DNA from: Adineta vaga
Lineage: Eukaryota; Animalia; Rotifera
DNA length: 64,000 bases
Assembly: GCA_021613535.1 (NCBI GenBank)
Contig: CP075496.1
Span: forward strand, 5,208,001-5,272,000
Reading direction: 5' to 3'
The translations under genes and the position numbers were made by a program. The notes under the pieces are model-generated. The model did no database searches and was not told where the DNA came from. It saw nothing but the letters and a program-made list of their open reading frames with translations. Below are positions 43,101 to 51,027 of the stretch, piece by piece. Position 1 is the first letter of the stretch. The number at the start of each line of letters is the position of its first letter.

Positions 43101-43655
43101 TTGAGTTTTTCCTGTTATATACGTAGAAAGATTACTAGTTTAAAAAGATTGATATCTACTCTTGGAATAGATTTTAATTATGAATAAAAATATGAAATAG
43201 GGTAATCCCTCTTGGATCAAAAGATCTATATCAAGAGTAAAATCAATCAACATACTAACATCGACACATAACGGTTTATCTATTCTATTCTGTTCTGTTA
43301 CAGAATAAAAACTGTTGCCCAAGATGGTTTTATTGAACTTTTTTCGAGAAAAAAAATAGGAGCTCGTGTTACGTCGCAATATTATTTCTATTCATATAAG
43401 GAGGACGTTCTTTTCTTTTTTATTCAAATAAACAGCGCAGTATTCAATATAAAAAAAAGGAGTGTATATGTATGCACAAAATAAGAGAAAGAAAAAACAA
43501 GAAAGAAAACGGCAAATTGAAAAAAAAAAGAATTTCAAAACTGATTTGTTTTTTTTTCATGTATTTGTATATATTGTATGTAAATTCTCTCGTTTTTCAC
43601 AAAGAGAAAATCATCATCTAATGTTCATGTATTTGCATATGAATTAGGTGTCAAA

Positions 43656-46411
43656 TCAATCACTGTTAATCAATGATTCTAGAAGAAAAATCGATGAATA
43701 AGAGATCAAAAGAAAAGAAACATCAGATAGAATCAAATCATCCAACCTGTTTTTATTTGATGATCGGAAGTTGACCAGATTCGAACTGTAGTATCATCGG
43801 ATGCTGAAGCGAATAGTAGAGGTAGTATAGGATGCCAGGAAACACAATTAACAGTACGTGAATGACCAGAAAAGATCATTATTGGACGTTCCTGTCTTCG
43901 ATGCCATAAATAAACTTTTGAATCTATTCATTGAAGAAGAATCGAAGAAAATAAACATACTAATAAATGAGAAAACAAACCTTCACTACCACTTGCAATG
44001 AATTCTTCGTTAGGTCCACCAAAGGTTGCATGATTAACATAATGTCCTTGTGTTACACCTTGATATTTACGAACTAATTGTCGATCATGTAAATCCCAAA
44101 GATGAACACCCTTTGAAAATAAATAATACATAGAAAGACAAAGTCTTTTTTATTTTGTAATCAACAATACTTGTGTAGCAATATTGAGAAGTGCTAAACG
44201 ACCATCTTTACTAACAGTAAAGGACATTATTGGATGATCTTCATGAATACTAGATAATAATTAAATAGAAATTTCATTTCAAAGAATTCTATTTTTTTCT
44301 ATTCTTACATTTGTTGATCAGTTAAACTATCAAATTTATAAGAACTTATACGTTTTTGTGCATCAGCTGCTAGTATTATTCCATCAGTGGTTACATTTAA
44401 ACATTGTAAACGAACACCTTCCCAACTATCAATAACATTACCATCAATATCCTACAAAAGATAGACATCAATCTCTAAATGACAACTCTTGTTCATTTCT
44501 AATATTCATACACAGTAATAGAATTGTCCACGTGATCCTCCACAAACGAATCTTGTTCCACATGGTAACCAAGCAGCACATGTCAAACTATCATCTGTTG
44601 TATGATTTATGCGTGATCGTTGTTCTTCTCTCTACAATATGAAAGATTCATTTTGTGTTTTTTATCTCTTTCAAAATCAGAACGAATCATTTCTTACATG
44701 AATATCCCATATCCATATTTCGTTACATTCATCTGTACCACATGCGATTATATATCGACTAAATGGACACCAAGCTATACAACCAATTCCAAATGAATGG
44801 CCATCAAATTGCTTTCGTAGTTTTACTTCATATGTTTCCTTTAAGAAGAAGAAGAGGTATAAAAGAATATTTGACACTTTTTCTTTCTTTTACCATATCA
44901 ACATCATATATGAGCAGATTACCATCTTTTGAGCCAGTAGCTAGTTTAGTACCATCGGGAGAAAATTTACAAAACCATACTTCATCCGAATGATCAGTTA
45001 ATGTTCGAATAGTAACACAGGGTAATGTTTGCCTAGAAAAGAATTAAAAATAAAACTCTGATGTATGTTCTTTCATAATAGATCAACTGAAGTTTTTATC
45101 TAATAATCGATTTGAATTATTCTATAATTAATTAGCACGTACTTAGTACAAGCATGATCTTGAAGTAACGATACATCTTCAATCGATAATTTGCCAGGTT
45201 TAATATGATATGTACAACGGTCTTGTTGAAATTCGATCGCTTGTGATAATAATGTTTCCAACCGTTTTGGTGGTAACATTATATTTGGTGGGAAATATTC
45301 TAATAAATAATAAAAATAGGATTTTATAAGACCATTTTGAATAGATTTTCTTCTCATAATAAAACTGTTCTACTTCATTATTCAATAATCAATTTTCGTG
45401 CGAAAAAAACTATTCGATTGTAGAAAATTACTTTGTAGTTTTTCCATTAAGTTTTCTCTTGATGCAAAACCTTTGCCACTCCAATTTGCTGCTTTACACA
45501 TATCTTTCATAGAATTAAACATCAGAAATCTAAAGAGAAGAAAACCTAGTTAAAATCAATCTATTTTTGTTGATCATTTCAATACGCTGTTAATTGATGA
45601 GTTCGTTCGATACGAATATTTAATGTTCGAATTTCATTTCGTAAACAGAAAAGTGCCTCCATAGCTTGATTATCTTCAATTAATTCAAAATATTTCTGTT
45701 CAAGAATTAAATATTTCATTTGCTAAAAGAAAATCAAATATTTATCGTTTTACTTAATTGATCAATTTATTTACCAATATGCCATCGTTTTCTTCAATAT
45801 ACTGTTTCAATTGATCAAGTGCAACAAGTGCCTAAAAATCAACATATCACTAATAAGCAAAAGAAATTTCAAATAGAATGCTTTTACTTCTGTCCATTTG
45901 CCTGACATAATAAGTTCACGAAAATTGGATGCCTGTTCATTTTCAAGTATGCAACCACTTTCTGTTATAAGACTTTCAACTGTATTACTGAAATGAATAA
46001 ATATTTTATTGTAAAATGAATATGAAGACGTTGCTTTTTTTCTCTGTCATACCCTAATCCAATACTTTGTAAATGTTGTCCAATGAGTCTTAGAATTTCT
46101 TTTTGACTGTCGGTAAATACTTGTGAATTTAATTGATTCGAATTAGTTTGGGTTGATGTTGAGGTGGAATGATTTGTATGAGTGTTTCCATTGCAATGTT
46201 GTGATTGTTGTTTAAGTCGTTCAAGATGATTAGTTGTATCAGTTGAATTGTTATCAAGGGAAGGATTTGAAGTTGTGGGATTTGTAGAATGCATCGTTTG
46301 AGTAGAAGGAGAATTGAAGTCTTTGGTTAATGATGTAGTAGAAGGATTTAGACGCGCTCGTTTGGGTGGTGGACACCCTGCAACGTCTTCGTCTGAACTT
46401 GATGAGGCCAG
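43656..46411 (-). CDS. WDR26: WD repeat protein 26 (CTLH/GID E3 ligase subunit), multi-exon; start proposed at CTG 46411 (first in-frame ATG 46294)
   Basis: LisH-like [115 protein letters not shown] and [12 protein letters not shown]. The stop is at 43656 if the terminal intron 43746-43679 is spliced, otherwise at 43733. Confidence 0.93.
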
Positions 46412-46470
46412 TATTGTTTGAAGATTAACAATGAATGACTCATAGGGAAAATGTTGGAATACGAAAGCAT
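46348..46470 (-). promoter_or_regulatory. Out-of-frame upstream ORF (ATG 46470, second ATG 46443, TAA 46350-46348) overlapping the proposed WDR26 CUG extension
   Basis: Frame MLSYSNIFPMSHSLLIF...NERV*. It covers CTG 46411 and ends 53 nt before ATG 46294. It is a uORF only if the transcript starts upstream of it. Confidence 0.45.
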
Positions 46471-47925
46471 ACGGCCAGCGTGAGAGAAAAGAGAGAGAGA
46501 GAAAGAAAAATATAGAGAGAGGAGAGAAAACAATTGCACGTTGTAATCGATATATATATATGTGTGTGTGTATATTCGTATGTAGAAAAGCAGATCAATG
46601 AGAATCTTTGAAATGGTAGAGGATTCAAATATCTAAATAGAGAAAAGCAAACGCTTATTGTGTTTGTCCTTCAAACGAACGAACGAAACGATTTCAAACG
46701 ACAGCAAGCAATCACATGGTTCAGAACGGACGAATAGGTAATCAGTGATAATGAAAAGAAAAAATAGGGTGACTTTAAAAAATTATTGTCGAGAATAGTT
46801 CAGGAGAAAGTAAATAATCAAAAAAAGTTAACGGCGGTCAAGGAAACATTTTCTCAATGGTGGAAAATTTTCTCCAATCATATGGAAGCTCCAACACGAG
46901 ATATGTTTGAAGATTATACTTAAACTATTGGATAAATCATCATGTTGATTTATTATCTGTGATCAATAAATTCGACTGTTTATTTTCTTGAAATTTATTT
47001 TAAAAAAGTCGATGTCTTTTATGTCATTTTTTTCAGTTTATTGCAAGGTTTTCAACAATATACAGTTGTCTCAAGTTACCACTTTTAACAAAAAAATCTT
47101 TCCTTGAATATTTAGTGTAATCACAAGACATTCAATCATAGCTCTTGACAATTTTCAATTACATAGACTACTGCGAGAATTGAATATAGCACTTCAAACG
47201 ATTCCCTTTAGGTTCAGTTGATTGTTTTCTTTAGATTATAGGTCTACTGAAAAGATAATAGTAACAACGACGGATATAATGCATAAACGTAAAGAATGTT
47301 AGTTTTATTTAACTTATGTTTACATCGTACTCTTTTCAATAGATTACAATGTTAAATCTATTAGATTTTCTCTCTCTTCATGATTTAACTGTTTTCTCAT
47401 TATAATTTCAAAGAATGCTATTGAATTCTAACAATATATTGTCATCTTTAGTACAAACTAAATTGCTAAACAAACAGAATAGAATCGATAAGTATATGGA
47501 TTCATGTTAATATGTATTTCAAATAAGAACAACGATCGATTCTTTAGATAAAATATATTATTGATTTTAACGCATGAACTTTTATAGTATTTATTAGTAG
47601 TGCTTCTGCAAATTGAACTAATAAAACAAACAAATATCTCTTTTTTTTGTCTTGTCTGTTCTACGACAATCGTCAGATGTCACTATGTTGAAAAGAAAAT
47701 CTTTTCTTTTTTTTCTACGTAGGGTTTACATGAATCTTATAATGATGGAAAGTCATTAGAGTACATTGTTTTCACAGAACATAGGATTTTTTTTGTACTA
47801 TTTGAACTTTGTTTGGTACCATTATTCTTCATTCGTAGAACGAAATCTGAAATTAAACTTTCTTCTAATTTCTAGAACAGTTAAATGAAAATTAATTAAG
47901 AAGATTCGACGAATTTGTTGTGTAA

Positions 47926-51027
<3,102 letters not shown>

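What the first reader, a model, noticed from the sequence alone, without database searches (positions are those of the whole stretch)
46294..46597. WDR26 appears to start at a CUG codon, giving an NLS-like N-terminal extension similar to the non-AUG extension of human WDR26
Seen: on the minus strand the WDR26 frame is open for 100 codons upstream of the first ATG (46294), back to TGA 46597-46595, with no ATG in it. Exactly 39 codons upstream is CTG 46411 in strong initiation context (A at -3, G at +4: ACAATA-CTG-G). It encodes [26 protein letters not shown]..., which is GC-richer than the flanks and contains a PPPKRAR monopartite NLS-like motif. Recalled, needs verification: human WDR26 has a non-AUG (ACG)-initiated extension with a similar Ser-run/acidic/PPPRKKPR motif. 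Inference: near-cognate initiation of WDR26 may be conserved across bilaterians, producing nuclear (long) and cytoplasmic (short) isoforms of this CTLH ligase subunit. Automatic annotation would truncate it.
Basis: partly seen in the sequence, partly recalled or inferred. Interest (0 to 1): 0.8.

Follow-up and report, generated by a model that had tools for sequence, protein, structure and literature searches.

The report
CUG-initiated long form of rotifer WDR26
The rotifer gene for WDR26, a subunit of the CTLH ubiquitin ligase, almost certainly begins translation at a CUG codon 39 codons before its first AUG, adding a conserved nuclear-import-like tag that is also found upstream of the first AUG of WDR26 in a shark and many other animals, so this unusual start looks very old.

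Summary
There is no direct proof of translation yet.

- **Transcript:** Spliced RNA contigs run colinear with the genome from the first intron up to 46824. No upstream exon or indel supplies an in-frame AUG.
- **Coding signal:** The second gene copy on another chromosome keeps the first 23 codons after CTG 46411 identical in amino acids, although 10 nucleotides differ. All 10 changes are synonymous.
- **Start codon:** In 18-19 distinct bdelloid sequences the CTG, A at -3 and G at +4 never vary. In two lineage groups a TAA sits three codons upstream, leaving only CTG or the neighbouring ATA as a possible start.
- **Alternative start:** The first AUG is also invariant, so a shorter form is plausible.
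- **Bdelloid extra:** An out-of-frame AUG exactly 32 nt upstream, in weak context, opens a uORF that overlaps the CUG in every bdelloid copy.
- **Deep conservation:** The same LASSS / acidic / PPxK(K/R)xR(L/V) module lies just before the first AUG of WDR26 in a shark and about 15 unnamed groups of sequences (extension-only profile comparison: 92.7 % probability, E 4e-7). CTG encodes that L in both non-bdelloid groups whose DNA I could read.

Nuclear targeting and the two-isoform switch are inferred, not shown.

The parts
46409..46411 (-). CUG initiation codon of the long WDR26 form (context A at -3, G at +4)
   Evidence: It is invariant, with its context, in 18-19 distinct bdelloid sequences and in two non-bdelloid groups. 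Conservation starts sharply here. An in-frame TAA lies 3 codons upstream in L008/L014/L013.
46295..46411 (-). 39-codon N-terminal extension (from CUG to the codon before the first AUG)
   Evidence: The frame is open with no ATG. Over the first 23 codons pS is 0.53 and pN is 0 against the second copy, while the other two frames give pN 0.17-0.19. Indels in the Ser run come in whole codons.
46382..46405 (-). Ser run plus acidic cluster, SSSSDEDV (residues 3-10); casein-kinase-2-type sites by inspection
   Evidence: Conserved in bdelloids (A1) and as SSS-[DE]-S-E-[DE] in non-bdelloid sequences (A5). The kinase assignment is inference from the S-x-x-D/E rule.
46349..46372 (-). Basic motif PPPKRARL (residues 14-21), an NLS-like element of monopartite type
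   Evidence: P14, K17, R18 and R20 are invariant in bdelloids. PPxKKxR[LV] is invariant in 14 non-bdelloid sequences. Import function was not tested.
46292..46294 (-). First in-frame AUG, probable start of a short form lacking the motif
   Evidence: This Met is an invariant column inside an otherwise poorly conserved, indel-rich stretch. One lineage copy that lost the extension keeps this AUG.
46348..46443 (-). Out-of-frame uORF (31 codons) starting at the uAUG 32 nt upstream of the CUG and ending at TAA 46350-46348, between the CUG and the AUG
   Evidence: The uAUG sits at exactly -32 with a pyrimidine at -3 and A at +4 in all bdelloid sequences. The uORF stop falls at +61 to +67, always before the main AUG. 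The uORF peptide is not conserved. The uORF is absent from the non-bdelloid loci.
46468..46470 (-). Second uAUG, in frame with the uORF (27 nt further upstream)
   Evidence: Present in the clade of the window copy, absent in the clade of the second copy.
46595..46597 (-). In-frame TGA that closes the frame upstream
   Evidence: It lies inside the transcribed leader.
46053..46824 (-). Exon 1 as far as RNA contigs reach (leader of at least about 413 nt before the CUG)
   Evidence: X1 record 1 and X2 record 3 are spliced contigs colinear over 46053-46475 and 46580-46824/46804. The stretch 46476-46579 was only masked as a repeat: it is 103 and 105 contig letters against 104 bases.
43429..46824 (-). 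WDR26 transcript: 14 exons, 13 GT-AG introns of 52-132 nt; 619 codons from CUG or 580 from AUG; stop at 43658-43656
   Evidence: Joints and frame check. Exon 6 matches only WDR26 in the PDB (8qbn_7, E 1.6e-13). Exons 7, 8 and 13 hit Pfam WD40.

Best explanation
CTG 46411 is the start codon of a long form of WDR26, read as Met by initiator tRNA. Scanning ribosomes that pass the weak upstream AUGs start there and make a protein beginning (M)[20 protein letters not shown]. This is an acidic, CK2-type Ser cluster followed by a monopartite NLS-like basic motif. Ribosomes that miss the CUG, or that translate the overlapping uORF and reinitiate, start at AUG 46294 and make a form 39 residues shorter without the motif.

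The extension corresponds to the non-AUG extension already described for vertebrate WDR26, so it probably dates back at least to the bilaterian ancestor. The uORF at -32 is a bdelloid addition that probably sets the long:short ratio.

**Shown:** the transcript structure, the coding-type conservation, and the invariance of the CTG, its context, the uAUG and the AUG.

**Inferred:** actual initiation at the CUG, nuclear import, and the switch.
For: **Transcripts**
- Spliced RNA contigs from two runs of one study, plus a run filed under another study and organism label but identical in sequence here, are colinear with the genome through the CTG.
- Two of them continue to 46824 and 46804. There are no gaps or indels in 46053-46475.
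- The transcript of the second copy is likewise colinear upstream of its CTG (loose end at 46416, matching).

**No AUG available**
- There is no in-frame ATG between the upstream stop and the CTG in the window copy (62 codons) or in the second copy (14 codons).
- The spliced-leader exon has 58 genomic copies and contains no ATG.

**Coding signature**
- Over the 23 codons, 10 of 10 differences are synonymous, whereas both other frames show amino-acid changes. The simulation gave 1/200000.
- Across 18 sequences the variable sites by codon position are 8/4/12.

**Start codon**
- CTG, A at -3 and G at +4 are invariant.
- TAA at -3 codons in L008/9/10/17, L014 and L013 leaves only ACA-ATA-CTG open.

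**Isoform logic**
- The first AUG is an invariant column.
- The uAUG at -32 is invariant, in weak context, and its uORF always ends before the AUG.
- In one lineage the copy related to the window's has lost the extension while the other copy in the same assembly keeps it.

**Depth**
- The bdelloid-only profile A1 retrieved P0041, P0042 and P0045.
- Their DNA has CTG-GC with A at -3 and no in-frame ATG upstream.
- About 20 further first-exon ORFs, including one named for the shark Pristiophorus japonicus, carry LASSS...PPxKKxR[LV] 3-31 residues before their first Met.
- Extension-only profiles align with probability 92.7 % and E 4.1e-7.

**Literature:** vertebrate ACG/CUG extension (PMC3105428); human peptide (PMC5834625).
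Against: - There is no direct evidence of translation: no ribosome profiling, no proteomics, no N-terminal data for any rotifer.
- Contigs show the dominant path only. A rare spliced or trans-spliced 5' end cannot be excluded, and the true transcription start is unknown.
- A uAUG 32 nt upstream should capture some ribosomes, so the long form may be minor.
- The codon before the CTG (ATA, ATC or ATT) is also a near-cognate.
- The seven variable codons just upstream of the CTG also vary least at the second position. This looks coding-like, although stops in three lineages argue against translation there.
- Most non-bdelloid sequences are unnamed ORF calls without DNA in hand.
- The shark model is annotated from an upstream ATG.
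- Ivanov et al. judged the fly and vertebrate extensions to be independent.
- A predicted hairpin downstream of the CUG has no covariation support.
Confidence: 0.8

Rival explanations
1. The extension is translated, but initiation is at the neighbouring AUA (46414) or at both codons, not specifically at the CUG.
For: ATA, ATC or ATT precedes the CTG in all bdelloid sequences and in L046/L047, and it lies inside the three codons left open by the TAA in L008/L013/L014.
Against: This codon varies (ATA/ATC/ATT) and in L048 it is AGC, which is not a near-cognate. In the non-bdelloid proteins the residue there is S, T or I. That pattern fits conservation of an A at -3 of the CUG rather than of a start codon. 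From general knowledge of near-cognate efficiencies, CUG is usually the strongest near-cognate and AUA or AUC among the weakest.
Confidence: 0.07
2. The conserved stretch is a 5'-UTR regulatory element (RNA or DNA) and is not translated; the protein starts at AUG 46294.
For: The nearby non-coding blocks (uAUG block, promoter-like element) are also conserved at nucleotide level. No translation data exist.
Against: The changes are confined to synonymous sites in one frame only. Indels come in whole codons. The peptide motif is kept while codons differ between rotifers, L046 and L048 and across many sequences. There is no covarying RNA structure.
Confidence: 0.06
3. A minor transcript splices or trans-splices an AUG-bearing exon into this frame, so the extension starts at a normal AUG.
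For: Bdelloids trans-splice more than half of their mRNAs (PMC1925144). A conserved acceptor-like site exists in the leader at 46640-46633. Contigs drop rare variants.
Against: - The SL exon has no ATG.
- Any acceptor upstream of the CTG meets in-frame stops: TGA 46597 here, TAA 15 codons upstream in the second copy, and TAA 3 codons upstream in three lineages.
- There is no AG between -32 and the CTG in any sequence.
- The AG of the GAG site is lost in L005, L012 and L027. The AGs after the CTG are absent in L005.
Confidence: 0.04
4. Translation starts at the uAUG 46443 and shifts frame into the WDR26 frame.
For: The uAUG is invariant and lies 32 nt upstream, one nucleotide out of frame.
Against: There is no conserved slippery site between -32 and the CTG. 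In three lineages the target frame holds TAA until 3 codons before the CTG. The uAUG is missing in the non-bdelloid loci that keep the extension.
Confidence: 0.01

Closest known systems
Vertebrate WDR26 ACG/CUG-initiated N-terminal extension (Ivanov et al. 2011, PMC3105428)
   Same: It is the same gene family and the same position, directly upstream of the first AUG of exon 1. It also uses a near-cognate start. The Ser/acidic plus PPxK(K/R)xR(L/V) module is seen in a shark WDR26 model and matched by the bdelloid profile.
   Different: - The rotifer extension is 39 codons. The human one adds about 9 kDa according to the paper.
- Bdelloids carry an invariant overlapping uORF that the two non-bdelloid loci lack.
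- The paper did not report the extension outside vertebrates and flies, and it proposed independent origins.
- The human sequence itself was not compared here.
Drosophila WDR26 AUU-initiated extension (same paper)
   Same: A non-AUG extension of the same gene in a protostome.
   Different: It uses a different codon and is reported as absent in mosquitoes.
FGF2 and c-Myc CUG-initiated long forms (textbook cases, from general knowledge)
   Same: A CUG upstream of the AUG adds an N-terminal segment. In FGF2 that segment carries the nuclear-targeting signal, giving nuclear long forms and cytoplasmic short forms.
   Different: These proteins are unrelated. Localisation of the rotifer forms is untested.
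SV40 large-T 'CK2 site + NLS' module (from general knowledge)
   Same: The layout is the same: an acidic Ser cluster about 10 residues before a Pro-flanked basic NLS. In T antigen, phosphorylation of that cluster speeds import.
   Different: This is a resemblance by inspection only. No kinase or importin data exist for WDR26.
C/EBP alpha/beta uORF-controlled choice of start sites (from general knowledge)
   Same: A short out-of-frame uORF placed next to alternative in-frame starts decides which isoform is made, through leaky scanning and reinitiation.
   Different: Here the uORF overlaps a non-AUG start and ends between the two starts. No experiment has been done.

Membership tests
WDR26 / Gid7 (CTLH-GID E3 ligase subunit) | A WDR26-specific segment between the CTLH/CRA region and the propeller | tested here: met
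   Exon 6 (51 aa) matches only WDR26 in the PDB: 8qbn_7 residues 273-323, E 1.6e-13.
WDR26 / Gid7 (CTLH-GID E3 ligase subunit) | C-terminal WD40 propeller | tested here: met
   Pfam WD40 scores above its cut-off on exons 7, 8 and 13.
WDR26 / Gid7 (CTLH-GID E3 ligase subunit) | N-terminal LisH and CTLH domains | tested here: inconclusive
   Single exons are too short for Pfam. The LisH-type stretch [10 protein letters not shown] is present, and relatives carry precomputed PF17814/PF23627.
Conserved non-AUG-initiated N-terminal extension | An in-frame open stretch upstream of the first AUG, with no in-frame AUG and closed by a stop, inside the mature transcript | tested here: met
   frame; colinear spliced RNA contigs; SL without ATG.
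Conserved non-AUG-initiated N-terminal extension | Protein-coding type of conservation in the extension | tested here: met
   10 of 10 differences are synonymous, pN 0 against pS 0.53, and the other frames are not conserved. The simulation gave 1/200000. The peptide is kept across 18 bdelloid and about 20 other sequences.
Conserved non-AUG-initiated N-terminal extension | A conserved near-cognate codon in good context at the 5' edge of conservation | tested here: met
   CTG with A at -3 and G at +4 is invariant. Stops 3 codons upstream occur in three lineages.
Conserved non-AUG-initiated N-terminal extension | Direct evidence of initiation (ribosome profiling, N-terminal peptide, two protein bands) | not testable with these tools
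   No rotifer data of this kind were reachable. Only human evidence from the literature is available.
Orthologue of the vertebrate WDR26 extension | Sequence similarity of the extension alone, at the same position in the gene | tested here: met
   hhalign of the bdelloid extension profile A4 against the non-bdelloid profile A5 (which includes the shark) gives probability 92.7 % and E 4.1e-7 over 22 columns. In every case the module lies just upstream of the first Met of exon 1.
Orthologue of the vertebrate WDR26 extension | The same start codon position as in human and other vertebrates | not tested
   No vertebrate DNA was read. The human sequence was deliberately not fetched. The paper gives ACG/CUG without coordinates.
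Classical monopartite NLS | A basic core K-(K/R)-x-(K/R), here in the form P-x-x-K-R-x-R | tested here: met
   By inspection of alignments A1, A4 and A5. The rule itself is recalled from the literature on NLS classes.
Classical monopartite NLS | Importin-dependent nuclear import | not testable with these tools
   This needs a localisation experiment.

The most novel reading that the evidence does not exclude
The CUG start of WDR26 is one and the same feature from rotifers to vertebrates. The same codon and context and the same (M)ASSS / acidic / PPxK(K/R)xR(L/V) N-terminus would then have been kept since the bilaterian ancestor. That would make it one of the oldest conserved non-AUG starts, and it would contradict the published view that the extensions arose independently. 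Bdelloids would have added an invariant overlapping uORF as a switch between an NLS-bearing long form and a short form of this E3-ligase subunit.
Probability: 0.6. Interest if true: 0.72.

Novelty: new member of a known kind. Interest (0 to 1): 0.62.

Why it matters
WDR26 shapes the giant CTLH E3 ligase assemblies and recruits nuclear substrates. In humans it is a neurodevelopmental disease gene.

A start codon that gene finders cannot see removes a conserved, probably regulatory N-terminus from every automatic annotation. The database ORF and protein calls retrieved here, including the named Rotaria models, begin at the AUG or at arbitrary upstream codons.

If the CUG start is shared by rotifers and vertebrates, three things follow:
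- The long form is an ancient, selected proteoform rather than translational noise.
- The module can be studied in any animal model.
- Bdelloids offer natural variants to work with: an overlapping uORF, and one copy that lost the extension.

Tried and rejected
- **Splice acceptor at GAG 46439.** Rejected. The RNA contigs are colinear. The AG is replaced by AA in L005, L012 and L027, while the ATG beside it is kept. None of the gene's 13 introns ends in GAG.
- **Acceptors just after the CTG (CAAG, TCAG).** Rejected. They are not conserved (second copy, L005), and the codons before them show whole-codon indels.
- **Assembly indel bringing ATG 46443 or 46470 into frame.** Rejected. There are no gaps in three RNA contigs over 46053-46475. 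The length differences of one base lie in the microsatellite 46476-46579, upstream of both ATGs, in a stretch without any ATG.
- **Spliced leader donating an AUG.** Rejected. The SL exon has no ATG.
- **Frameshift from the uAUG.** Rejected. See the rival explanations.
- **Hairpin downstream of the CUG as an enhancer.** The window sequence folds well (z -2.9). The 15-sequence consensus is weak, with one compensatory pair. Left open, not claimed.
- **Pfam and PDB searches of exon 1.** Nothing useful.
- **Earlier notes of this scan near the locus, or on non-AUG starts.** None.
- **Supplement of Ivanov et al. and the Pouchkina-Stantcheva SL paper.** Not held.
- **Naming the unnamed sequences through cluster look-up.** No names.
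- **Joined spliced protein.** Exons were searched one by one by reference. Joining was done only inside a script to check frame and length.
- **Human material.** No human sequence was fetched or compared.
Full report
**Observation.** On the minus strand the frame of ATG 46294 is open back to TGA 46597-46595 and holds no in-frame ATG. CTG 46411 lies 39 codons upstream in the context ACAATA-CTG-G and encodes [23 protein letters not shown]. The extension has 47 % GC, and its first 23 codons have 55 %. The rest of exon 1 and the leader have 33 %, and the window has 30.5 %. The gene is WDR26. Exon 6 matches only WDR26 among solved structures (8qbn_7, E 1.6e-13), and exons 7, 8 and 13 are WD40 repeats.

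The genome has 100.8 Mb in 6 contigs, and the window lies on contig 4. Earlier notes of this scan call it Adineta vaga, which I did not verify. Named relatives of this exon come from Adineta steineri and Rotaria species.

**Transcript structure.** Contigs of four runs were laid on 43400-47200. Three runs gave contigs of 2.0-2.5 kb that skip 13 GT-AG introns, so they derive from spliced RNA. The resulting model has 14 exons. It codes 619 residues from the CTG or 580 from the AUG, with the stop at 43658-43656.

- These contigs are colinear with the genome over 46053-46475 without gaps. In two runs they continue to 46824 and 46804.
- The hole at 46476-46579 is only repeat masking: 103 and 105 contig letters against 104 bases.
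- The dominant mRNA therefore has a leader of at least about 413 nt. It contains the in-frame TGA and no in-frame AUG.
- No indel brings ATG 46443 or 46470 into frame.
- The loose end at 46416 is the sequence of the second gene copy, whose transcript is likewise colinear upstream of its CTG.
- Contigs cannot exclude rare variants or give the true 5' end.
- Bdelloids trans-splice many mRNAs (PMC1925144). However, the leader exon, found 58 times in the genome followed by GT, has no ATG.

**Comparison with the second copy.** A diverged copy lies on contig 1.

- The CTG is kept there. The next 23 codons give the same peptide although 10 nucleotides differ, and all 10 changes are synonymous (pS 0.53, pN 0). 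In the two other frames pN is 0.17-0.19.
- In a simulation, 1 of 200000 sets of 10 random substitutions kept the peptide.
- Upstream of the CTG, amino-acid-changing differences appear at once. The frame is closed by TAA 15 codons upstream, with no ATG in between.

**Other bdelloid sequences.** An exhaustive protein search with exon 1, look-ups of the encoding contigs and a metagenome scan gave 18-19 distinct sequences.

- In all of them CTG, A at -3 and G at +4 are invariant.
- The core P-[PA]-[PA]-K-R-x-R-[LV] and the acidic Ser cluster are kept.
- The length changes in the Ser run are whole codons.
- Variable sites by codon position are 8/4/12.
- In L008/L009/L010/L017, L014 and L013 an in-frame TAA sits three codons before the CTG. 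Only ACA-ATA-CTG remains open, with no AG in it. An acceptor or an upstream start is therefore impossible there.
- The first AUG is an invariant column in an otherwise fast-evolving, indel-rich stretch.
- In one lineage (L031-L035) the copy related to the window's has lost the extension. It keeps the promoter-like element, the uAUGs and the AUG. The other copy in the same assembly keeps the extension.

**The overlapping uORF.** An ATG exactly 32 nt upstream of the CTG is invariant in all bdelloid sequences. It is one nucleotide out of frame and always has a pyrimidine at -3 and A at +4. Its reading frame ends 61-67 nt after the CTG, always before the main AUG, using TAA, TGA or TAG in different lineages. 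Its peptide is not conserved.

The neighbouring G that would make a GAG acceptor is lost in three lineages while the ATG stays. The conserved feature is therefore the uAUG, not a splice site.

I read this as a switch. Ribosomes that start at the weak uAUG bypass the CUG and may reinitiate at the AUG. Those that leak past the uAUG can use the CUG. This is inference.

**Beyond bdelloids.** A profile of bdelloid sequences alone retrieved two AT-rich relatives (P0041, P0042) and a GC-richer one (P0045).

- Their DNA (L046, L047, L048/L049) shows CTG-GC with A at -3 at the L of LASSS. There is no in-frame ATG between it and the upstream stop. In the L046/L047 pair, conservation begins a few bases before the CTG.
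- A second profile search found about 20 more first-exon ORFs with L-A-S-S-S, an acidic run, and P-P-x-K-K-x-R-[LV]. This module lies 3-31 residues before a first Met that mostly reads MQ(A/S/T)NG. One of them is a model named for the shark Pristiophorus japonicus.
- The residue before the L is S, T or I and the sequence further upstream is unrelated. That fits conservation of an A at -3 rather than of protein. This is inference: DNA was available only for L046-L049.
- Profiles of the extension alone, without the LisH part, align with 92.7 % probability and E 4.1e-7.
- Rotifers and a vertebrate bracket the bilaterians.

Ivanov et al. 2011 described an ACG/CUG-initiated extension of vertebrate WDR26 and an AUU-initiated one in flies, and thought they arose independently. 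A human extension peptide has been reported. GENCODE had not annotated the human form by 2022. I found no paper in the held library that reports the extension in other invertebrates.

**Mechanism and limits.** The best reading is a CUG-initiated long form carrying a CK2-type acidic Ser cluster and a monopartite NLS-like motif, alongside an AUG-initiated short form. This resembles the CUG forms of FGF2. Human WDR26-CTLH acts on nuclear substrates (PMC7616709), which makes a nuclear-targeting form plausible.

- Initiation at the CUG, nuclear import and the switch are not shown.
- The ATA before the CUG cannot be excluded as a start.
- A predicted hairpin after the CUG lacks covariation support.
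- Most non-bdelloid sequences are unnamed.
- The human sequence was not compared.
- The joined spliced protein was not searched. Exons were searched separately by reference.

Noticed in passing
window 46830-46882 (minus strand): A 53-nt element lies just upstream of where the RNA contigs end. It occurs only at this gene and its second copy in the genome. It is 83-94 % conserved about 400-550 nt before the CTG in other bdelloid lineages, including the copy that lost the extension. It is probably the core promoter or start-site region.
   Followed up: partly
window 46712-46717 (minus strand): A minimal 'start-stop' uORF (ATG directly followed by TGA) sits in the leader. One-codon uORFs occur at a similar distance in L008, L014, L005 and L006.
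   Followed up: partly
window 46633-46640 (minus strand): A conserved pyrimidine tract plus TTTAG followed by ATAYTT lies 150-270 nt upstream of the CTG in 10 of 16 loci, in both gene copies. It looks like a 3' splice site and may be the spliced-leader acceptor. If used, the leader would start at 46632 and still contain the in-frame TGA.
   Followed up: partly
G000 contigs 1, 2, 4, 5, 6 (e.g. L043-L045): There are 58 copies of the 22-nt spliced-leader exon followed by GT, and none of the reversed control. Many sit in head-to-head pairs about 130 nt apart and in clusters on contig 5.
   Followed up: no
window 46435-46443 (minus strand): The invariant uAUG is embedded in the palindrome ATGAGTCAT. 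This is the classical AP-1/GCN4-type bZIP site. The palindrome is broken in L005, L012 and L027 while the ATG is kept.
   Followed up: partly
L031-L035 (metagenome and assembly contigs): In one bdelloid lineage the copy related to the window's has lost about 75 nt, including the CUG and the whole motif. It keeps the AUG start and the leader elements. The other copy in the same assembly (L036) is intact. This is a natural 'short form only' allele.
   Followed up: partly
window 46476-46579: A compound microsatellite (CT, TA and CA runs) in the leader differs in length between the assembly (104), run X1 (103) and run X2 (105).
   Followed up: no
L029, L037 (clade of the second copy): A run of 6-8 His codons has expanded between the basic motif and the first Met in some lineages.
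   Followed up: no
window 47962-48369 (plus strand): The divergently oriented neighbour begins with an ORF carrying a [21 protein letters not shown] stretch. This looks like a GH13 alpha-glucosidase or amino-acid-transporter heavy-chain type protein.
   Followed up: no
P0050 (unnamed, 123 aa): This is a variant of the module (LESSEDEDFGG...PPPPKRSRF) whose ORF call begins only 7 residues upstream with M. It could be a lineage where the extension is AUG-initiated, but no DNA was available to check.
   Followed up: no
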